NCBI GenBank assembly: GCA_907165135.1
Contig: OU015569.1
Coordinates: 11,346,001 to 11,410,000, forward strand
Length of the DNA: 64,000 bases
Direction of reading: 5' to 3'
From: Oikopleura dioica
Taxonomy: Eukaryota; Animalia; Chordata
Made by a program: the position numbers and the translations under genes
Notes under the pieces: generated by a model
What the model was told of the DNA's origin: nothing
Databases searched by the model: none
What the model saw: only the letters and a program-made list of their open reading frames with translations
In this document: positions 1-61,286 of the stretch, in pieces
Layout of the letters: each line of letters begins with the position of its first letter
How positions within the stretch are numbered: position 1 is the first letter of the stretch

Positions 1-667
1 ACCCTAATTAGCGGAGGAATTGTTGTGCCGCGGCATTGCTCTAATTTAGGCGAAATAATTAATTGACTTGCAATTTATTGAGCCAAAAAGGAGGCTTTAT
101 TGGGTGAAAAGCACGCAGAAGAGGAAGGGACCCACAGATGGCGAAAATAGTAGAATCGATTTTGAACAGGAGGGTGGGCTAGCTACGACAGATTTTTTGA
201 TTAGCCGAATTTCAAATTTAGAAATTCGCAATCTTGGGCCAAGCATCTGAATTTTTCTCGATAAGAAGTTTCTTCTAAAAGAAAGCTAAATCTACCGACT
301 GAGATCAAGGAAGAGAACAATTGTCTAAAAAGATGTAATTTTAGTTTGTTTATTTATCAAAAAAAAGAATAAATAAGGCAGTAGAATATATAAAAAAAAG
401 TGAGTATATGACAGTGAATACATGTGAAGTGCTTTTTTCCAATTAGAATTTTAAAAGTTTGCTTGTTTCTTTTTCCAGTCCATTTTTTTTTCTTAAAATC
501 GTTTTGACATTTCTTGCAATATTTTGTTTGAAGAATTCTGTGTAAAGATAAAATGCATCGAATTTCTGATTGGGCGATGCTCATGCTACAGCGCCACCTC
601 TCTAGCAGCTGATGGAAAAAAGGCATTTTCTAGCCCAGGTTTATAAAGAACCTTTTTTTATCTTTTC

Positions 668-2380
668 CTATTTTTTGGACTTCTTATTCTTCTTCTTCTT
701 TCCAATTTTGAGACTTTTCTCAATGTTGGCGATGGCGGCTTCGTTAGACGTGTACTTCGCGCTCTTTCCCGGCTGAGCTTCGTCTTGCGACCATTTCATG
801 ATTTGAAACTCGAGGCCGTATTTTTCTGAACGAAGTGCTGCATTTTCCTCCATGTTCGCATGCTTCGCGAAGAGAAAAGCCGCGCGCCACTAGAAATCGA
901 GTTCATTTGAGAAACCCATTGAAATCGGCTTACCCTGTCGCGGACTGTCTTCGATTCTTGCAGCAAATAGTGCCTTACATAGTCTGGACCGTAATCGACA
1001 AAAGGCGTCATGTCGTAAGTAGGCACCCATTTGTTGATCGGCCGCTGGAATTTGCCGAGCTCGCAAGGCATCATCGTCACGTGAACGCTTAAAATTTTGG
1101 TCGTCATTTCCTGGGATTTCTTTTACCTGTCGTGGTCGCCATTGTTTCGCATAAACTCGCCCCTTTCTTGGTCAATTTCAACTTTCAAGGTTTGAAAAAT
1201 TAATTCCAACATATTTCAAGTGATTTTTCTACAATTTGAGCTACTTTTTTCAGACCAAAAACCCATAGCAGGCCATGGTAATCCTGGAGCATGAATTCCA
1301 ATCCAAACAATGGAGCCAACTGTTAGTCGAATATCCGAGTAAATCCAGTATTTTGACCCGCCCTTGATAAGTACTCTTAGAGGATTTCGCATTGACTGAT
1401 TGCTTACCGGATGGTCAGGCTTTTCCTCAGGTTTCGAGCAGTGGTTGTATTTTTTGCGGGGATCAGGGTTCATTTCGCAAATCCAGTAGTCTGGCAATAA
1501 CGCAGGGTCTTCAAATTTGATTAAGAGCAGCTCTGAAGATTTGATTTACCTGTGCATTCTTTGAGATAGCGCCACTTTTTGCACTCGACACATTCGACCC
1601 ACGTTCCTTCGGCTTGGAGAACCTCACTCTTCCACTCCTTACCATTCCAATTGCGGCCGTGGAGCTTAATTATTCCGATTCTTCGTTTCTTTTTCCCGTT
1701 GGAAGAAGAAGCATGAGACGCTGTACTGTCGTAGTTTCGGATGACGTTGGTCCTCACGACCCGAGGTGTGTTTTCTGGTTGATTCGATGGTGCAGCTGGC
1801 TCTGTTGATGTCGAGGTTGTCTCTGACCGTGTATCGCGCAAATTAGAAGCCGATTTTTTCTTGTTGTTCGCAGTTTTCATCGGCTTCGGAAGAGGGATCT
1901 CGCTGCCCTGTGTGATTGCAAATGGAATCTTGGAAAAATAGGGTGGCCGAGTTGTTTTACGAGCTCTTCTTGACCCTCTTCTTTTCGACTGCGACTCGTC
2001 ATTGCTCGTGCTTGTGCTTGGTATGTCTTCAGAATTGCTGGTTGATGGAAAAACAGGAATAGGACTTGGCAAAGCCGAAGATGGCGATTGTGACGAAGCA
2101 GCGACTGACTCTTTCGAAAGCTGACTGAAATATTCATCAGCTTTGAGAATGATGACGTCGTCCTCGTCAGAAGAGTCTCTGTGGAATCGAAGTTGACTTG
2201 TGGCTTCTTTAGTTCTGCTCTCATTTTTCAAAGTACTGGTGCTGGTTTTCTTCTTGGAAATCCGCTCTGCACCGACGAATTTAACCGGCGAAACAGCGCG
2301 AGATCCACTATCCCGGCCACTCATTCTCGAGGAGCCCCCTCGTCGAAGACGCTTTGGCTTGATGATCGTGTCTCCTGAAT
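668..2380 (-). CDS. ZCWPW1: ZCWPW1-like protein, 3' exons (zf-CW + PWWP)
   Basis: Spliced exons give WVECVECKKWRYLKECTG/DPALLPDYWICEMNPDP..YNHCSKPEE (zf-CW), then GSIVWIGIHAPGLPWPAMVEID..SVHVTM..KWVP (PWWP), ending at TAG 668. GT-AG introns join in frame. Domain order resembles ZCWPW1/2; exact paralog uncertain. Confidence 0.75.
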
Positions 2381-2689
2381 TTTTAGTTTCTCAAGTTTTT
2401 ATCCTATATCTACTGAAAACATAAATTATCTGATTAAAAATTTCAAATTTACATTGCCCGCCTAAATAATGAGTAATAACTATTTGGGGAATTTTTTAAA
2501 AATACTTGCGGGGGGCAAAAACCGTCGGAAAAAATCACTACCATTATTAATGAAAAAATTCTCATGTTCTTGAGGCTCTTGCTTTACTGATTCTCTAATT
2601 TCTGACGAGTTCATCTTCTTTATCAATATTTTCTCAGAATAAATGAGCGTTTTGGGAATTTTTTGCGTAAAACCGATTCTTGGTCCCTA

Positions 2690-5600
2690 ATTGGCTCGTC
2701 GCTGGCTCAAGCTCACCTGGTTTGCGCTGCGCAGACCATGGCTTGTCATTTTCTCTCGACAACCTGGCTTCATCTTGCGTCCTATTGATGGTCGTGTTGA
2801 AGCTTTCGTCGGCGAGTGGATTGAAGGCGCCGATGTATTGTTTGCGTGGCTTGTCGTCGTCGTCAATGGGGAAGAGGAGGCTGCTGTCCGGCTGCTGCGT
2901 GGAATTAGCGGCGATATCCTAAAATTTAGTTTAGTAAAGAGAAGAGATAAAACGCTATTTTTTCAGAATATAAAGTGACAAAAAAACATTCTCTACTTTT
3001 TGTAGTTCTAAATTGTTGAAACGCTTGCCTGTCTAAAACTGTCGTCTGGAAACAACTTGTTCCACTCTTTCTCGGCCTGTGACATTCTTTTTGGCTGTGA
3101 TTTTTTATCCTTAAAAATTTTATAACTAAGTTGCTTGTACGAAAAAACTACCTGAATATTTTTTTCTTCTGAATCTGTACTTTCGATTGCGCTGGAAATA
3201 ATGGATTGATCCAGTGTCGCCTAAAATGTGTTTCAATGTTGACAAAGGGTTTTCAAATTTACCCCGTTTAAAATTTCCTCGATCGACGGAAATTTCTCGA
3301 ATTGTAATTCGCGATTCTTTTCGACCTTGGCGCCTGACTCTTTTTTCGGACTTTCTGATGCGATCTTCTTCTTCATTGAGTGGCCAGATGATTTTCTTTT
3401 TAGGTAAACTGGTTTCAGTTGTCCTGATCGTTTCTTGGCCGGTTTTTGTGACGAGGTCTTGATTGAGGGAGCAGAGTTTTCTGGAAAGAGGGTCTGCGAA
3501 GTGATCACGCTGACTTGCTGCGATTTGCGCGAATTCTGAGTCGATTTTGGAACTAAAAACTCGTCACTTCTTCGTCGATCATTTCTTCTTTCTTCGGGTC
3601 CCTAAATTTAGTGTCAGTTTTTTCGTTGAATATATATTTCCATACCTTTGAATCAACCAGTTCATCTCCTAGAAGATTGACCGGAGCACTGTGTTCTTCC
3701 AATGAAAAATTCTAAAGAAAAGTAATTACTTTCGAGCTGTTTGGAGAAGTCAATTACCAGTGGATTCGAATGATCGAAGCTTGCAAGTGTATCCGACGGT
3801 TTTGAAGCTGCAGTATCCACCGGCTAAAACGTATTATTTAAGCAGCTCTGTTAATTAATTTTCCGAATTCTTACGTTCATTAGGTATTGGTTTGAAGTTT
3901 GCGCAGGCGCGCTTTCTTCGTTGATTTCAAAACTTTGCGCCTTCTTGAAGATGTCCGCGTGACTTCTTTCTCGCCGTTTCGAACTCGACTTCTTTTTCAA
4001 AATCTTTCGGCGAGTCGGTACAACTGGACTACCATCAACTAAAATTATTTATGTTACTTATACTAGCTCCTACAAAGAATCTTACAAGGTTGGGTTTCTG
4101 GAGATCCAAGTGTTTGGAACTCTTCATTTTCCATTTCCGCTTTTAGCTTCCACTCATTGTCGCTTCCTTGGGACTTGATGTGCTTTATCAACTTCCCGCC
4201 AGCGATTTTCATCTTCTTCACCTCGATACTGTCATCGTGGTTGATGGACAGTGCCTGAGATGTATTTGCCAATTCATGCGCGTTCAGCTTTTCCGAGTTG
4301 ATCTCTTGTTAAATATTCAGATAAAGATTAGTGAAAGCAACCGTTCCTGACATTCCTCTATGTTTTCATCCAGATCATCTTTTTTCTTTTCCGGCGAATT
4401 GCGGAGTTCAGTTTCGAAGTACTTCATCTGACCTGGAGAAAAGACATCGCACTCTCATCAGGAGCTCTAGTGAAGGTTTCGTTGCTCCTGTTTCTGTACT
4501 CGCGGTTCCAAGAAGATCTGATGGGAGACAAGTTAGAAGTCATTGATTCCAAATTTCTGCGCTGGCAATGCTCGCTCATATCAAAGCTTATTATTTCAGT
4601 CAGTTGATTTTTAACAAAATGTTTCTTACTTTTGAGAAGAAGATTGTCGGTTAAGTCCATTTCCGTCGACAAAAGGATCATATGCGCTTTGCTGAGGGTA
4701 GGGATGAGGCTGATATCCTTGAGGATAGTAGGCTTGAGGATGGTACTGCTGAGGGTAGAATTGCTGAGGATGATGGTGGCCAGGATGGTATTGCCGAGGT
4801 TGATACGCCTGGTGATGAAATTCTTGAGGACGGAATTGCTGAGGAGAATACTGCTGAGGAGGAGTCCGTGCTGCAGAAGTTCCTCTCATTCGAGAATTCA
4901 TTCCGAGCAAGAATTGCGTCTCATTGTATTCCCGATGTCGTGATCGCGAGTCCTCATAAAACTGTAGCTCATCTAGATACTGCGCCGCTGGTGTGATGAT
5001 TTCGCCGCAAATGCTCTGGTTCACACTCTTTGCGGCTTCTAGATTCACCTCAGTTTGGGTTTTGTTTTTCGAAGAACCGATGTCTTCGCTGGAAAGAGTT
5101 CTTCCTCCGCGCTGAATGTACTGGTTGATGGTGACTGGCGCTCGGGAATGAGCGCGACGAGTTTTTCGCGGCGGACTGTTGTCAGAAAACGTTCCAGCTG
5201 TGAAAAGGTCCTGTGTTTTTGGGTGGGCATAAGTTGAAATTTAGTGACCACGGGAAAAGAAATTTAAGTTTGACTGAATAGAAGCAATTGAATATGCTCA
5301 CCCCAGCCTGACTCCTCCGAGAGGAGGATGGTTGGTTGTTAGAGTAGTCGTCAGCTGGGAAAAGCCGACGAACTACAGAGTGCGGTCGCTTGATCCGAAC
5401 CGGACGACTCTCATCATCTGATTGAAAAAGCGGACCACTTTGGTTTTGGTTGTTTGCTGCGCTTTGCCGTTGAGAGCGTTTTGCTCTCCGCCCGGGCAGA
5501 AGCGTAGGAACGGGGGCATCTTCATCAATCAGGAGGTCACCTGAGCCGAGCGAAGTACGATCATCGTCATCATCATCGTCAACACGACGATGTTGATTTT

Positions 5601-54231: not shown

Positions 54232-55711
54232 TTATTTTTTCGGGGCGATTTTTTGCGAAATATGCTTAGTTACTAAATTATCGTTGAGTTGTAGTAAATG
54301 GAGACCACCAGCGGATATTACTGCGATGTCTTGCAAACCATCGCCCGTCTGAATATTCAAATTAGCAGATGATTTCAAAGATGAGTTTATTACGAGATCG
54401 AAGGAGCGTATTTGTAGCACGGGCGTTCGGAATTTGCGCTGCCATTGTTTAACACAATCGTGGCCTTCTATTTTGTAAGTCAAGAGCATTCGCCCAAAGG
54501 TCCCAATACAAAAGCCATGTCCATCTATTTCGCAGAGTTAGATGTTTATGAATGAGCGGTTGTCTTGTTTACCTAGTCTTTCAATGGGAGAAATAGACGT
54601 GACGGCGTCGTGATTCATCGAATCCTCGACCATGATTCCTTTGCTAAGGCCGTTGACATCGTAGTCGAAGTACATCACCGCGCCTTCCCAAGTTGCAGCG
54701 ACTAGTAAATGACCCGGAGCGACGAATGTTACTTGCGCGATGGGAGCAGAAAACTTTCTGACAGAACGATTTAACCATGATTTCGCACTCTGTTGACTTA
54801 CCTGACATGTTCTTCTTTAGCCTCCGCCCCGTCACTATCGACTTTCACGACAGAAAGACTGAGAGTACCATCTTCATCCCCGGTGCATGTATAGCGCAAA
54901 CCGAGGGCTCGATCGAACCAGATGTCCATCGCAATTGGAGGTCGGACCTTTTTGCTCTTGTTTTTCAACTGGAGTTCGGGAAACCATTTGTCCATCTTGA
55001 AAGTATCGAGTTGGTAGAACTGCTTGGATCGATGCTCGAAAACGCCGTAGCCTTGGTTCGACAGCATTATAAAAACATTTAGATGCTCGCCTGCATGCTT
55101 TTGGATCAGCCAAAGGAATGTTTGAAAATCAGCGAAATTGAAAGGCAACTGCAATAAGATAATGTTATAATAAGACAACTAAACCCTTTCGCATTCCCTT
55201 CCCTGTAAGGTATTGCTTCGTCAGGAAGAGTGATAAAGTTAATCAACTCTCCGATTCTGTTAGACGGATCTTTTTCAGTCCCAAGAAGCGCGTTCTCGTA
55301 AAAGTTCACCGAGGTTTTGTACGTATGCGAGTTTGGATTTCGTTTCGTAAACAGAACGCCGACGATGATATTCTGGAGATTTCCCTCCCGATTGAGATCG
55401 AAAGTGCCAGTTGATAGCGAAGTTATTGTCGTTGAGTTGTCAGAGAGGTATTCCATGTCAAGATCGAACAAAATGTTGGAGTCCCAGCATTTCACCGCGC
55501 CGGGCTTGGATTCGATCAACTCGTCGGAGTCGAATTCCAAGCTAGATACTGAAGAAATTTAACTTACCTTACGCCCTTTTTCTGTACCTCGATGGGAGTC
55601 GGCGACAATGAGTTGCCAGGGAAGCGAGTCTCTGTAGATCGTGGCGACACCAAACGGAACTGCATTCATTTTACAAAAGTTCATCTCGAAATACTCTTCC
55701 TCGTCGCACAT
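54232..55711 (-). CDS. KPTN: Kaptin (KICSTOR subunit)
   Basis: LLTYK..QWQRKFRTPVLQIRSFDL/TGDGLQDIAVISAGGLHLLQ and ELINFITLPDEA match kaptin; ATG 55711, TAA 54232. Confidence 0.8.
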
Positions 55712-55940
55712 TTTCAAAAGAGACTCTCTAATAAACGATTTTGATTGAAAATACGACGTTGAACTTTTCGAATGAATAGATAGGATTAATGTCTTGCGAA
55801 TAAAGCACAGAAATAAGAAGAATATGTTGTTTTTTATCGGGTAGAAATAGAATATCAAGAGTACACAGAACACGAATTAAAAAAAGAAAGAAAGAAGCAA
55901 TAGAAACAATAGAATAGTAGTTAGATAGATAGAATGAATA

Positions 55941-57405
55941 TTAGCGTTTTGGGCGTTTCATTGGTGGGGATTTTGGGCGAAGGCGCTCGATTTCCTCGGT
56001 GGTGACGACGAGCGGGTTGTCTTTGAAGTGCGATTTATATACTAGAAGAAGGCTTGAAAGACCTGGAGTTGTTTGAAACGAGTACCTGTAGGGCAAAAGT
56101 TGGAATTGGTGACTTTGGGGCCGACAGTTAGCCAGCCTGGGCGAATGTACGAATCACGGCCGAAGAGGTGCAGTCGTCGACGACCAAGACAAAAACGCTC
56201 CACAATGTCCAGCAGCTCGTGTGGCTAGAAAAAATATAACTTGCTTTATAAGGGGCGTGTTTTACCTTTTCGTCGTTGCCGACTTCGCGTTCTTCGTCAA
56301 TGAGAAGATCGATGTCGATATTGGCGTGGATGAAATCGCCGTCGGTTGCTCGACGGATGATGCCTTTGATTCCCATAAGACAGTGCTCCTTCAGCCGATT
56401 GAAGATGCCAGTTGGTTGCAGCGGCTTTTGGCGCACTAGAATCCTTAGAACATCAGAACTATAGCCTGAGCTAACCTCTTGTGTGGTTAGTCTTGATCCA
56501 GCAAATGTCCTCGCAGCGCCTGAAGCCCCATTTCTGAAGGCATTGTCGTCCGAAATCGAGACCAGCTGTGGAGCCACACCAGAGGAAGACGAATCCTCGT
56601 GGCGCCGAAATCGCCTCGATGTTCAATTTCATGATGTCCTCCCATTTCCAGTTGTCGTCACTTGAATGCTCGTTGAAATAGAAAGTCAATCAATGAACAA
56701 ATTAGAACCTTAGGGCGGTCGTCTTGTATTCTTCCAAGGGAGCGTCGATCACGATTGAATCGAACTGGCAATCGAGATCTTCCAGGTTGTAGCTTCTTAG
56801 ATCAACTGAAAGAAATATTAGGAGAGGTCGAAACGCAACGCTAGAAAGTAACCTGAAAAGTAAGTGGGTGGGCAGTGGCTTTTTGAGTTACTTCGTGTTT
56901 CTTGTCGATTAACTCTTTGATCTTTGGATATTCAGCGAATCGCTTCTCCATTGACACGTCTCGGATGTAATTCGCCGGGTACTGGCCTGTATCGATGTAG
57001 TTCTGACAGTAGTCATTGTGTGGATTCAATGAGTTCGTCCCTTTCAGAAATGTCGACGTATCAGTATACTTTGGAGCCTAAAAGGTATCGGTGAATATCA
57101 AGACTGGAAGTTCTCCTCATCTAGCAGAAGAAGAATGGCAAATTTATTGAAGAAAGACTAACCGATTTGACTGAAGTAGCTTCCTCCTCAACTTCAGTCT
57201 CTTTCTTCTCAGTCTCGCTTTTTTGAACCGATCTCGTCTGCTGGTCTAACTTGGAGTTGAGAACCGAATTGAGCTCATCTTCACTTATTTTGACAATAGC
57301 GTTCTCAGGCAGCATTAAAATGAGTTTTACCTTTTCAAGCCTAGCGTAGTAGCGAGATCCTTCCGTCGAGCTGCCGATTTTTCCCTCAGTCGTTGCATCG
57401 ATCAA
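55941..57405 (-). CDS. METTL14: m6A methyltransferase non-catalytic subunit METTL14
   Basis: [87 protein letters not shown]; start uncertain. Confidence 0.95.
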
Positions 57406-57602
57406 AGATCTTCTTGAGCCAGTGAGATGCTTCTCTTCAATCCTTTCTCATGTCCACCCCATGTTTACTTAAATTCGGAAATCAACGAGGAAAGAAATAG
57501 GAAAATAAAGAAATAATATTTTGAAAAACGGAATGAAAGAAGGAAAAGAACAGTGGAGATAGTTTTTACAGAAATAAGAAGAAAAATAGAAAATTAAAAG
57601 AG

Positions 57603-60600
57603 TCAAACAAAGCCAAAATGTTTGATTTTGAGCGTCGAAGCATTTTCGGGAGTAGGCTGGGCAGGAGGCGGCTTTCCCTTTCCATCCCCTTTTTTGCGCT
57701 CCTTCGAATTCCGAGCTGAATTTGGTATAATTGTGGCTGAATAGATCTGTTCAAGTTACCGCTTATGTGCTTCATAAATCGCTGGATTGCAGGAGGGTCA
57801 TCTTCGCTGTCAACATCTTGGTGATCGTCATGTCTCTCATCTCGACCGTCGTCTTCACCAGGGGATTCCATCATTTCATCAACTTTTTTCGACGCCTCGG
57901 ATGCCAATTCAAAGTCCTTGAATCAATGATTAATATTTTCATTTCTCATTTAGAAATGAACAACCTTGTAGTGAAGGGCCATGTGATGGATGTCGAGAAA
58001 TAGATCTTGCGCTCCAATGTCCGTGGCAAGCAAGAACGCTTTTTGTAGTCTTCTGTGGCGCAGCAAATGATGAAGAAATCTGCGTGCGTAACGAACGACG
58101 TGATCTCTGTACTCAATCACAACGAGGTCGTTGATGGCTCTCGTTGGAGCATAGAACGACGCCAAGGCAGCTTCGAGTTGTGTCTCGGTCGTGTAGTTCA
58201 ACGGCTTGACGATCAACGCGTCACAGATGGTAGTGAGGGAGGCGTAAGCGACTCCAGGACAGGGATCCGAGATTTTGTCGTCTGGACGATCGCCCACTTT
58301 TCAGGCGCGATTTGAGTTATCGCGCAGGAGCTAAAATTCTGATCGCGCGCTCAAATGCGCAGCGTTTAGGCGCGATGGCAAAAACTCGCTCTCTCGGTGA
58401 TGGGGCGATGAATTTCGATCGCGCAGCCCCATCAGGCCGACAAAAAATACTCGCGCGTTCAAATGCGCAGCGTTCAAGCGCGATGGTATAAACTCGCTCT
58501 CTCGGTGAGGGGGCGATGATTTTCGATCGCGCAGCCATATAACGCCGGATACTCACACGCTTCAAAATGGTCGAAAATCTGCCGAGCGGGAGTGCGATGG
58601 TGGCGCTTGGTTTCAATTTTGCCGACCTAGTCGGCGCACGAATCAAATGATCAGCGTGAGATTGCTGACTAAGTTGACCGATTTTTTTGAAAATGGAATT
58701 GTCCATCTCCTCATAAGAGAGCCGACAAACAAAATGTAAATTTGTACTGACCTCCCGCAACGTAACCTACAAATAAGTCGTGCTAATCGCTGAGAGTGAC
58801 TCTTGGCACCGGAAATATGCGTAAAATCTGACTATTTATCAAAAGAAAAATTTTTAAGGTAATTGGATTCTGATGTTAAGCCAACTTATGACTGAAAAAT
58901 ATATTTTTATTGGTTTTTGAACATGCAGATTTCGAAAATTTCATAAAAATTATAAATATAATGATTATAAATTATAAATAATCCAATTGGATATATTGAA
59001 ATCGCCTTATAAATGCTTTTTCTTCTTCTAATTTTGGCTATACATCACGCGCCATCGTTTAATCGTGTAGCTTACTCCAAAATGACAGTGTTTTATCGAG
59101 TATCAAGGGGTCCCCCCCATGTTGAAATTTTCATGGGCGAAAATATGGTGTCGCGCACAGCCAGGGTGGCCGAAAATAAGTTATCGCGCTCTCGGGCCCA
59201 CCGCGATGAATAATCATCGCTCCTGAAGCGCGAGGGCGCAGGGAAACCATCGGCATATTTTTGACTAATCCAGCCCGCCGATGGGAATTTTTCGCGCTGC
59301 GCGCCTAGGAGCGAAAATGATTGTCGCGCGCTGAAGAGGAGCGCTAGGTGCGCGATCGTCCAGACGACAAAATCTCGGATCCCTGCTCCAGGAGCCATGT
59401 TCCAATTAATTGAGTACAAAACTTTGATGGCTTCTTGGAAGTTGTCGTTTTTAACGTGACTTTTGACAAGCGACAGTGCTCCAGATTCCTGTCTCCCGAC
59501 AGTCAACGAGACGAGAACCAGTGGCTGGCCGAGGGAAACGACTTGTATTGGGCTTAATGTGTATAAAAGTCTTAATTATTCCATATGTTCTTTATTAAAA
59601 ATCTTTTATTAAGAATCATTGAAGCCCTAACTAGAAGTTGCTTCGACGACAGCCATTTCAGGTGTTTGAGCATAATCGTATGGGTGGAATAAACCGTGCC
59701 GCCAAGTTTGAGAACAGACTGCTTATCAGAAGATCCATTAATAGTACTCAACTCGATACAAGTAAGGCCAACGTCGAAGAACATAACCTCTCCATTGCGC
59801 GAGGAAACAGCAAGAAAATGGCTGCCCGGATGCCATGACAAAATACTCGGCCGAACTGGGAGATAAACATGCTCTGCCGAGTGTGTCTTCGTATCAAACA
59901 CAATCAGCATATTATCAGAACAGCCAAAGCAAAACTTTTCTTCGTTCGGGCTCAATTCGCACACAACAACGGAAGATTTCATTTGGATTTCGAGCTCGTC
60001 AACGATCTTCAACCCTTGGTTAAGCTTGATCGAATAGAGGGTCATGCGAATATTTGTTGGATTCACTGGGTCGGGAATCTCAAGCAGCCAGAAGGAATCT
60101 GCATTCAGCTCAGAAAAGATGACGTCTTGAATTAGGGAGTTGAAGGGAACGCGCGCGACGATTTCAGAATTTCCGGAATGAGAGATGATCATGAGATGGC
60201 CTCGAGCTCCATCTTCAATTCGCTCTGACCAGTACACCGCTGAAAACGATCCTTTCGTCCGGATACAAGCGTTGTCGGGCATGTCAACAATGTACAGCGG
60301 CTCTGGAGGAGAAATCTGCCGGTGCAAATCGGGTGGAATGACAGAAATCCGCGAGCCAGATAACAGGGAGACAACGTACTTTTCGCTCACTTGTGCGACA
60401 TCAACTGGATCGGAGGAATGCTGGATAAATTTGTCCTTCTTTGTTATATTGTCTATGTCGTTGTTGCGGAGAGAGAAACTGACCAAAGAGCCATTGGAAA
60501 ACATCATCAAAACGGAAGAGTCAAGAGGTCGCGGTAAAATAGACAAGACGCGATTTTGAGTGAGAAGGGCATTGAGTTTCTGAAGCCGATCTCGATTTTC

Positions 60601-60735
60601 TTTTGATAAAGACCAAATTACTTCTTTTCTACTTCGAGTCCAGTGCTCGCGCATTTCGTGGAACACACTATGCTTCATAGTTGGCTTCTTCGGGTGATAG
60701 GAATTAAGCGCGATATTTGCATCTGATTTAAACAT
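57603..60735 (-). CDS. WDPCP: WDPCP/Fritz planar-polarity effector, interrupted by a transposon
   Basis: WSLSKENRDRLQKLNALL, LSWHPGSHFLAV, LASFYAPTR..YRDHVVRYARRFLHHLLRHRRLQKAFLLATDIGAQDLFLDIH, C-terminal LKIKHFGFV*. Confidence 0.9.
58260..59385. mobile_element. Non-autonomous hAT-type element in a WDPCP coding exon
   Basis: Perfect 34-bp TIR cagggatccgagattttgtcgtctggacgatcgc; perfect 8-bp TSD ctccagga (58252-58259, 59386-59393); subterminal gcgcgat motifs and a ~120-bp tandem duplication. Confidence 0.95.
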
Positions 60736-61286
60736 TTAATAAGACTCTGCTCCTGCCAATCAATTAATTCTATTACAACTCGTAATTTACTTGTTATGAA
60801 TAACAGTCATGCTAACCTGACGAATTAAAGACTGACTCCTCTTCTGACCAACAATGGAATGAAACAGCAAAGGACATGAGTGTGTTTTCTAAAGGCGATA
60901 TTTTTTATTTACATTTTTCCAGTAGAAGATTCTTTAGTTTAAACCAGGGGGAGGTACTGAATATGGGGTTTTGGGGGTATTCAGCCAAAAGAATATCAGC
61001 ACGTGTCTACCCTAGGTTTAGACCGACAGAGAAAAGAAAAACACATGTTGAACTCTGATTTCCATATTATTATAACTGGCAATGATGTGTGTTTAGAGTT
61101 GTGAGTAGAGGCCCTCTACTAGAGATTATAGAATTGAAGTTCGGATAAGAGCAAAAGTGGGGTCAAAATATAATTTTATCCGTAATGGAATCCGAATTGG
61201 ATTATCCGGATGGAATCCAAGAAGTATCAAGTTCAAAAAATAAAAATTAAAATCTATATACAGTCAATAGAGCAGTATTCTGAGAG

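What the first reader, a model, noticed from the sequence alone, without database searches (positions are those of the whole stretch)
58252..59393. hAT transposon inside a WDPCP coding exon that could be removed as a new GG-AG intron
Removing the element plus one TSD restores NWNMAPG-VAYASLTTIC, collinear with WDPCP, so a conserved exon was hit. On the coding strand the second TSD copy ends in AG (tcctggAG), supplying an acceptor, and the TIR begins CAG|GG. Splicing 59382-58252 gives GCA GTC GCT, in frame with one extra Ala. GG donors after exonic AG appear elsewhere in this window. This may be a snapshot of transposon-to-intron conversion (introner-like); otherwise it is a truncating allele of a conserved ciliogenesis gene.
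Basis: partly seen in the sequence, partly recalled or inferred. Interest (0 to 1): 0.8.

Follow-up and report, generated by a model that had tools for sequence, protein, structure and literature searches.

The report
Young transposon inside Oikopleura WDPCP exon
A recently jumped 1.1-kb DNA transposon sits in a highly conserved coding exon of the cilia gene WDPCP on the X chromosome of the sequenced Okinawan Oikopleura dioica male; it could be spliced out as a GG-AG intron, but nothing here shows that it is.

Summary
The window is Oikopleura dioica OKI2018_I69, X-specific scaffold. A 1,126-bp non-autonomous element (38-nt inverted ends, perfect 8-bp duplication CTCCAGGA) splits a WDPCP/Fritz exon between Pfam Frtz positions 441 and 447. 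Related lineages have the empty site: one mRNA contig and three genomic contigs.

The insertion is young:
- All 14 ends and 7 duplications of the family are perfect.
- The nearest copy is 99.1% alike.
- The downstream exon shows 26 synonymous and 0 replacement codon differences from a sister lineage.

WDPCP is single-copy, and the X-specific region is haploid in the sequenced mature male, so this was his only allele.

The GG-AG reading is arithmetically right (+1 Ala) but unproven. At least 23 other in-frame G*-AG pairs exist near the ends. The published gene model uses a different GT-AG path. No RNA from this lineage could be reached.

Three or four of the seven copies lie in coding exons. 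One end-to-end splice would leave 33 nt in frame at any site.

My reading is a recent disruptive allele (about 0.5).

The scan noted two similar exon or splice-site transposon insertions elsewhere in this genome.

The parts
58252..58259 (.). Target-site duplication, copy 1 (CTCCAGGA; TCCTGGAG on the coding strand).
58260..59385 (.). Non-autonomous hAT-like element, 1,126 bp, with no match to any of the 4,227 Rfam families above chance. Its internal open frames were not scanned against protein families.
58260..58297 (+). Left terminal inverted repeat. It contains a CAG|AC acceptor on the coding strand (AG at 58283-58282), which the published gene model uses.
59348..59385 (-). Right terminal inverted repeat. 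On the coding strand it begins CAG|GGATCC. The proposed GG donor is at 59382-59381.
58343..58547 (+). Two subterminal direct repeats of about 97 nt, 108 nt apart, 89% alike.
59386..59393 (.). Target-site duplication, copy 2.
59386..59552 (-). WDPCP exon, part upstream of the insertion (...VSLGQPLVLVSL...YSINWNMAPG). Its 5' boundary is uncertain: 59552 or 59541.
57965..58259 (-). WDPCP exon, part downstream of the insertion (VAYASLTTICDAL...MALHYK). It matches Frtz profile positions 447-538.
59096..59098 (-). First in-frame stop if the exon is read through into the element, after 96 element-encoded codons.
59632..60722 (-). WDPCP large exon (beta-propeller part, Frtz profile 186-371). The published model leaves it early at a GT donor, 59747-59746.
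60817..60877 (-). WDPCP first coding exon (MSFAVSFHCWSEEESVFNS), followed by a GT-AG intron at 60816..60723.
57603..57916 (-). WDPCP last two exons (57916-57760 and 57715-57603), separated by GT-AG introns of 48 and 44 nt.

Best explanation
A young, non-autonomous hAT-like DNA transposon has cut-and-pasted into a strongly constrained coding exon of the single-copy, X-linked WDPCP (Fritz) gene of Okinawan Oikopleura dioica.

**Shown**
- The insertion is real, derived and recent.
- It was the only allele in the sequenced mature male.

**Inferred**
- It is primarily a disruptive allele. Read-through adds 96 foreign codons, then a stop, and loses the most conserved C-terminal third.
- Such an allele would be tolerated in a 47-generation laboratory culture, or would be a fresh mutation.
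- It is not yet an established intron.
- Any rescue by cryptic splicing at element-borne sites is possible but undemonstrated.
For: - **A true transposition.** Perfect 8-bp TSD and 34-nt identical ends. The orthologous site is empty in an mRNA contig (L031/P0002) and in three genomic contigs (L032-L034/P0005), which overlap by exactly the 8 nt of the TSD.
- **Youth.** All 7 full copies have mismatch-free 34-nt ends and perfect TSDs. The closest copies are 98.5-99.1% alike and lie within 1.16 Mb on the same scaffold.
- **No decay of the gene.** Exon 3b has 26 synonymous and 0 replacement codon differences against L032, and 60 against 1 for L031.
- **Read-through stop** at 59098-59096.
- **Single copy.** Only this locus matches PF11768 in the genome.
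- **Hemizygosity.** The scaffold is XSR. The assembly comes from one fully mature male of culture generation 47, and sex-specific regions are haploid in males.
- **Published model.** XSR.g16675.t1 does not use the GG-AG junction.
- **Intron size.** Introns here are normally about 49 nt. Those I mapped were 41-103 nt. The proposed intron is 1,131 nt.
Against: - A hemizygous male reached sexual maturity with this allele although the gene is under very strong purifying selection, and its CPLANE partner Fuzzy is retained. That would be easier to understand if some functional mRNA were made.
- Three or four of the seven family copies sit in coding exons.
- O. dioica splices about 11% non-GT-AG introns.
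- The element's CAG|GGA start fits the 'AG before, A after' context reported for its GA donors.
Confidence: 0.5

Rival explanations
1. The element is removed as a 1,131-nt GG-AG intron (59382..58252), using the donor CAG|GG supplied by the inverted end and the AG that ends the second TSD copy. The product is WDPCP with one extra alanine.
For: - The junction is in frame and stop-free...NWNMAPGAVAYASL....
- The donor context AG|GGA resembles the reported O. dioica non-canonical donor context.
- About 11% of introns in this assembly are non-canonical.
- The carrier male was viable and hemizygous.
- A GG-AG solution is also among the few in-frame options for the neighbouring intron of the same gene.
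Against: - No RNA evidence.
- It is one of at least 23 in-frame G*-AG pairs near the ends.
- An AG-ending TSD is expected in about 1 of 16 insertions by chance (my estimate).
- Positions +4 to +6 of the donor (TCC) do not match any donor I mapped.
- The intron would be about 20 times the usual length.
- The RNA-hinted public annotation did not call it.
- The extra residue falls in a stretch that is identical across lineages.
Confidence: 0.18
2. Splicing between sites carried by the two inverted ends: donor CAG|GG in one end, acceptor GTCCAG|AC in the other. This leaves 3 + 22 nt of element plus the 8-nt TSD, 33 nt in all. It is in frame at any insertion site and adds 11 residues here (MAPG-ADDKISDPCPG-VAYASL). 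Other in-frame cryptic pairs are included in this rival.
For: - The 33-nt remnant is stop-free in the three exonic copies tested: WDPCP, the MON2-like gene and the giant repeat protein.
- The same CAG|AC acceptor is the one chosen in the public gene model.
- Three or four of the seven copies are exonic.
Against: - No RNA evidence.
- A 25-nt piece open in all three frames is expected by chance about one time in three (my estimate).
- With only seven young copies, the lack of exon depletion can simply reflect youth.
- An 11-residue insertion in an invariant segment may not be functional.
Confidence: 0.15
3. The published gene model is right. A GT donor inside the large exon (59747) is joined to the AG inside the inverted end (58283-58282). 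This skips about 91 conserved residues and adds 8 codons of end plus TSD.
For: P0001 (XSR.g16675.t1, 540 aa) matches the window exon by exon at 100% with exactly this path. The annotation used RNA-seq intron and exon hints.
Against: - It deletes Frtz profile positions of about 345-441, which are conserved in the 612-aa orthologue P0002.
- AUGUSTUS will pick any frame-keeping GT-AG path when an exon is broken.
- Whether a hint supported this intron is unknown.
Confidence: 0.12
4. Assembly artefact: the element is not really in the exon.
For: The assembly is Nanopore-based with an estimated 1.3% error rate.
Against: A perfect TSD that exactly matches the single copy at the empty orthologous sites is the signature of a true transposition. 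Coverage was 221x with Illumina polishing.
Confidence: 0.03

Closest known systems
Maize Ds and dSpm elements spliced out of exons (wx, adh1, bz alleles; Wessler and colleagues, late 1980s; from my own knowledge, not checked here)
   Same: A non-autonomous cut-and-paste element (Ds is hAT) lies in a coding exon. Its termini offer donor sites, and nearby AGs serve as acceptors, so a partly functional mRNA can be made.
   Different: In maize the splicing was shown by cDNA. Here nothing is shown. The proposed donor is GG, not GT. The host is an animal with a permissive major spliceosome.
Introners: DNA-transposon families that generate introns (Micromonas, Aureococcus, dinoflagellates and others; reviewed in PMC11282704)
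   Same: It is an element with TIRs and a TSD, in which one splice site would come from the element and the other is co-opted from the TSD. That is exactly the scheme drawn for Micromonas IE1.
   Different: Introners are short, number hundreds to thousands of copies, and are known to be spliced. This family has 7 copies of 1.1-1.5 kb, and splicing is untested.
MITE-derived non-canonical introns of the larvacean Fritillaria borealis (Henriet et al. 2019, as summarised in PMC11282704 and PMC13326754)
   Same: The same animal class. Introns with TIRs and TSDs at species-specific positions are removed by a modified major spliceosome.
   Different: Fritillaria introns are mostly AG-AC or AG-AT and are fixed in large numbers. 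Here the boundaries would be GG-AG, and the insertion is one young allele.
G*-AG non-canonical introns of Oikopleura dioica (11-12% of introns; GA-AG most frequent)
   Same: The proposed donor has G at +1, a non-T at +2, an exonic AG before it and an A at +3. The acceptor is AG.
   Different: The known ones are short, established introns. I found no published GG-AG statistics in the papers I could read. Denoeud 2010 was not held.

Membership tests
hAT superfamily (non-autonomous member) | 8-bp target-site duplication | tested here: met
   All 7 full copies have perfect 8-bp TSDs, each different.
hAT superfamily (non-autonomous member) | Terminal motif 5'-YARNG (criterion from my own knowledge) | tested here: met
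   Both ends read CAGGG.
hAT superfamily (non-autonomous member) | An autonomous partner with the same ends that encodes a hAT transposase | tested here: inconclusive
   - The first 23 nt of the end occur only 15 times in the genome (7 pairs 1.1-1.5 kb apart, plus one solo end), so there is no long copy.
- hAT dimerisation-domain ORFs exist (9 matches), but the three loci compared share no similarity with the element.
- Only three of those loci were compared.
hAT superfamily (non-autonomous member) | Weak target consensus nTnnnnAn (criterion from my own knowledge) | tested here: not met
   T at position 2 in 4 of 7 TSDs. A at position 7 in 0 of 7.
WDPCP / Fritz (Pfam PF11768) | Frtz profile match above the curated cut-off, collinear across the break | tested here: met
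   - Scores of 61.8 and 115.8 bits against a cut-off of 26.2.
- Profile positions 186-371, 397-441 | 447-538.
- The orthologue P0002 (612 aa) is uninterrupted.
Spliceosomal intron (G*-AG type of O. dioica) | G at +1 of the donor, AG acceptor, and the frame kept after removal | tested here: met
   59382..58252 gives +3 nt with no stop. There are 22 other such pairs near the ends.
Spliceosomal intron (G*-AG type of O. dioica) | Actually removed from RNA | not testable with these tools
   No transcript or contig of the Okinawan lineage other than the annotated model was returned.
Introner family | Many near-identical copies that are introns in unrelated genes | tested here: not met
   There are 7 full copies. 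Three or four lie in coding exons, one in a 3' flank and one at an exon end. None is shown to be spliced.

The most novel reading that the evidence does not exclude
This small, currently active hAT-like family may be tolerated in coding exons because its inverted ends carry a matched splice pair (CAG|GG ... GTCCAG|AC). With the 8-nt TSD, that pair always leaves 33 nt in frame and open in all three phases. Particular insertions such as this one could then be trimmed further, to +3 nt, by an AG in the TSD. That would make it a live transposon-to-intron pathway in a chordate already known for massive intron turnover.
Probability: 0.12. Interest if true: 0.75.

Novelty: new member of a known kind. 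Interest (0 to 1): 0.42.

Why it matters
Oikopleura has replaced most of its ancestral introns, and where the new ones came from is still argued. In its relative Fritillaria they came from miniature transposons. Here an active cut-and-paste family has landed in coding exons of conserved genes. One insertion is hemizygous in a viable adult, in a species whose spliceosome accepts G*-AG sites.

That makes the first step of intron birth directly testable with RNA-seq that already exists for this culture. The +3-nt and +33-nt products differ from the empty allele, so they can be told apart.

If no splicing is found, this is an ordinary young loss-of-function insertion. It is also a warning that the public model for this gene (XSR.g16675) contains transposon-derived codons and lacks about 91 real ones.

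Tried and rejected
- **Transcripts or other individuals of the Okinawan lineage.** Word searches with the large exon and with the downstream half-exon returned only the annotated model, plus more distant lineages that all have the empty site.
- **How RNA-hinted annotation treats another exonic copy.** For the giant repeat gene, the representative search gave only paralogue-level hits (29% local identity to the best, P0011). The last word search gave nothing above 36% identity. The model is either longer than the length window or absent, so the result is uninformative.
- **Exact 19-mer of the upstream flank plus TSD in JGI metagenome contigs.** Two chance matches, unrelated sequence.
- **Autonomous partner.** No long copy with these ends. 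The hAT-domain loci are unrelated in sequence.
- **Rfam and tandem-repeat scans of the element.** Nothing of note.
- **Local RNA folds of the two junctions.** No better than shuffles: z -0.18 and -0.75.
- **Second WDPCP copy or alternative haplotig.** None.
- **Somatic excision restoring the gene.** Rejected as a main explanation, because excision would leave the 8-nt duplication and shift the frame (inference).
- **Denoeud 2010.** It could not be read.
- **Joined sequences.** I sent no joined (excised or spliced) WDPCP sequence to any search or folding tool. Exons were searched one by one by reference. Frame checks on the excised sequence were done only inside scripts.

Full report
**Where this is.** The large exon next to the finding finds an annotated protein, Oidioi.mRNA.OKI2018_I69.XSR.g16675.t1 of Oikopleura dioica (P0001, 540 aa, on a 12,959,145-bp record). 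Every piece of that protein matches the window at 99-100%. The window's genome has 64,281,565 bases in 19 contigs, as the OKI2018_I69 paper reports: 64.3 Mbp in 19 scaffolds. So the window is the X-specific region (XSR) of the Okinawan O. dioica reference. That reference was assembled from one fully mature male of laboratory generation 47, and the paper states that sex-specific regions are haploid in males.

**The observation.**
- The 8-bp CTCCAGGA is present at 58252-58259 and at 59386-59393.
- Between the two copies lies a 1,126-bp element. Its ends at 58260-58297 and 59348-59385 are 38-nt inverted repeats, 97% complementary, with the first 34 nt identical. That 34-mer occurs nowhere else in the window and in none of 100 shuffles.
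- WDPCP is on the minus strand. Taking out the element and one duplication restores a single open frame...YSINWNMAPG|VAYASLTTICDAL..., with 60 codons before and 103 after the junction.
- Pfam's Frtz model (PF11768) matches the upstream piece at profile positions 397-441 and the downstream piece at 447-538 (115.8 bits). It matches the large upstream exon at 186-371.
On the coding strand the duplication reads TCCTGGAG and the element starts CAG|GG. Joining after 59383 to 58251 gives GGA GCA GTC GCT, which is +3 nt and one extra Ala.

**The insertion is derived.**
- A 5.3-kb JGI metatranscriptome contig (L031) encodes an uninterrupted 612-aa orthologue, P0002, 78% identical in the large exon. It reads ...NWNMEPGVAYASLTTICDAL....
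- Three genomic contigs from environmental assemblies (L032-L034, about 88-91% DNA identity to the flanks) run straight through the site.
- Their alignments to the two flanks overlap by exactly the 8 nt of the duplication. Their product P0005 begins MAPGVAYASL.

**The insertion is young, and the gene shows no decay.**
- The genome holds seven full copies (1,120-1,542 bp) and one solo end.
- All fourteen 34-nt ends are mismatch-free and all seven 8-bp duplications are perfect, each different.
- The interiors differ by 1-6% in aligned positions plus indels.
- This copy is 99.1% and 98.5% like two others. All three lie on XSR within 1.16 Mb, at C2:10245242, 10296311 and 11404260. That pattern is expected from local hopping of a cut-and-paste element.
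- The half-exon downstream of the insertion differs from L032 at 26 codons, all synonymous. It differs from L031 at 61 codons, 60 of them synonymous.
- So this is one of the most constrained parts of the protein, and it is untouched since the insertion.
- PF11768 matches only this locus in the genome, so there is no second copy or alternative haplotig.
- The CPLANE partner Fuzzy is also present.

**What the element is.**
- It gave no match above chance to any Rfam family, and I did not scan its internal open frames against protein families. It has two subterminal direct repeats of about 97 nt.
- The 8-bp duplications and the CAGGG terminus fit hAT.
- The weak hAT target consensus is not seen.
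- I found no long copy with these ends.
- The genome's hAT-dimerisation-domain ORFs share no sequence with it in the three loci I compared.
- 'hAT-like, non-autonomous' is therefore the most I can say.

**What happens to the transcript.** Read straight through, the exon continues for 96 element-encoded codons to a stop at 59098-59096. That loses the conserved C-terminal part. Whether splicing rescues it could not be tested. No transcript or contig of the Okinawan lineage other than the annotated model came back from any search.

- It leaves the large exon early at a GT (59747-59746).
- It re-enters at the AG inside the left inverted end (58283-58282).
- So it lacks about 91 conserved residues and carries NDKISDPCPG, encoded by the end plus the duplication.
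- The annotation used RNA-seq hints, but whether this intron had one is unknown. A gene finder will take any frame-keeping GT-AG path around a broken exon.

**How special is the GG-AG pair?**
- Allowing any G at +1 and any AG, I find 23 in-frame, stop-free pairs within 30-70 nt of the ends of this copy.
- The donor CAG|GG is a fixed property of the element. Given it, the chance that a random duplication ends in AG on the coding strand is about 1 in 16 (my estimate).
- None of the other exonic copies has that arrangement in frame.

In favour:
- O. dioica has about 11% non-GT-AG introns in this very annotation.
- Its GA donors are reported to sit after an exonic AG and before an A, which CAG|GGA matches.

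Against:
- Introns here have a median of 49 nt, and the ones I mapped in this operon-like run are 41-103 nt. The proposed intron is 1,131 nt.

For the neighbouring WDPCP intron, the orthologous mRNA junction would require GT-AA or TT-AG in the window. The in-frame G*-AG options there are two GG-AG pairs, one GC-AG and one GT-AG. A likely GA-AG intron lies in the third gene of the run.

**The family as a whole.**
- The C4:8763312 copy splits an open frame of 78 + 56 codons. The Mon2/Sec7 HDS domain starts three residues after the junction.
- The C5:8931520 copy splits a single open exon of about 1,972 + 4,746 codons. It belongs to a giant GCC2/GCC3, ephrin-receptor-like repeat protein.
- The C2:10245242 copy lies five codons after an ATG of an ankyrin-repeat gene, also on XSR.
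- One copy lies six codons before the end of a WD40 open frame, where the duplication contains GTAAC.
- One copy lies about 140 nt downstream of an open frame, and one is unclear.

So three or four of seven copies are in coding sequence. This is no depletion in a genome with one gene per 3.7 kb. With copies this young, that may only mean selection has not yet acted.

One feature is common to all copies. Donor CAG|GG in one end and acceptor GTCCAG|AC in the other leave 3 + 22 nt, which with the 8-nt duplication makes 33 nt. That is in frame wherever the element lands and is stop-free in the three exonic copies tested. A 25-nt piece open in three frames is not rare by chance, so this is a lead, not evidence.

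**Verdict.** The thing is real: a recent hAT-like insertion in a conserved exon of a single-copy X-linked gene, carried hemizygously by a viable adult. Weighing the evidence, I give:

| Reading | Probability |
|---|---|
| Essentially disruptive allele, tolerated in culture or newly arisen | about 0.5 |
| In-frame splicing rescue, all routes together | about 0.45 |
| - the end-to-end pair or another cryptic pair | about 0.15 |
| - the published model's path | about 0.12 |
| Assembly artefact | about 0.03 |

The kind of event is known:
- Exon-inserted Ds and dSpm elements are spliced in maize (my own knowledge).
- Introners co-opt a TSD for one splice site.
- Fritillaria's introns derive from MITEs.

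This is therefore a new member of a known kind. Its value is that it makes the first step testable. Two earlier notes of this scan (s1-322916, s1-393153) describe other young transposons at an exon and at a splice donor in the same genome. I did not test them.

**Limits.** I submitted no joined (excised or spliced) sequence to any search or folding tool. Exons were searched separately by reference. Frame checks on the excised sequence were made only inside scripts.

Noticed in passing
window 59542-59631 (minus strand), WDPCP intron before the hit exon: The orthologous mRNA (L031) joins ..CTA|GTC GTT... In the window that would need GT-AA or TT-AG boundaries. The in-frame G*-AG options are GG-AG 59626..59553, GG-AG 59627..59542, GC(59641)-AG(59553) or GT(59647)-AG(59553). 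The boundary sequence is conserved in L032-L034. This looks like a non-canonical intron or a lineage-specific shift of splice sites.
   Followed up: partly
window about 55150-55201 (minus strand), third gene of the run: A likely GA-AG intron (AGG|GAAGGG ... TTGCAG|TTG). The homology-predicted acceptor of the L031 mRNA has no AG in the window, so the Okinawan protein probably carries 13 extra residues (LPFNFADFQTFLW).
   Followed up: partly
L031 (JGI 3300009606, Ga0115102_10043629), 1-5289; window 54235-60877: A 5.3-kb metatranscriptome contig carries Frtz, an MT-A70 methyltransferase and a third ORF with no introns, in the same order as the window. It is a polycistronic (operon) transcript of a related Oikopleura.
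   Followed up: partly
G000:C5:8917274-8938986 (L049-L051): A single open exon of about 6,700 codons encodes a GCC2/GCC3, ephrin-receptor-like cysteine-rich repeat protein. It is interrupted at C5:8931520-8933061 by a 1,542-bp copy of the same element. Element plus TSD is 1,550 nt, so the frame shifts.
   Followed up: partly
G000:C2:10245242-10246447, 10296311-10297439 and window 58260-59385: The three most similar copies (98.5-99.1%) all lie on the X-specific scaffold within 1.16 Mb, as expected from local hopping. The copy at 10245242 lies five codons after an ATG of an ankyrin-repeat gene.
   Followed up: partly
G000:C1:636914, 641782, 732634, 737494; C4:380299, 393172; C5:13847453: Seven near-identical 177-codon open frames carry a hAT dimerisation domain. 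They sit in repeat-rich units about 4.9 kb apart on C1. They have no sequence similarity to the element studied here.
   Followed up: partly
window 58260-58281 and 59632-59747: The public gene model XSR.g16675.t1 includes 22 nt of transposon end plus the TSD as coding sequence, and omits about 91 conserved WDPCP residues. It is probably a gene-finder workaround for the broken exon.
   Followed up: yes
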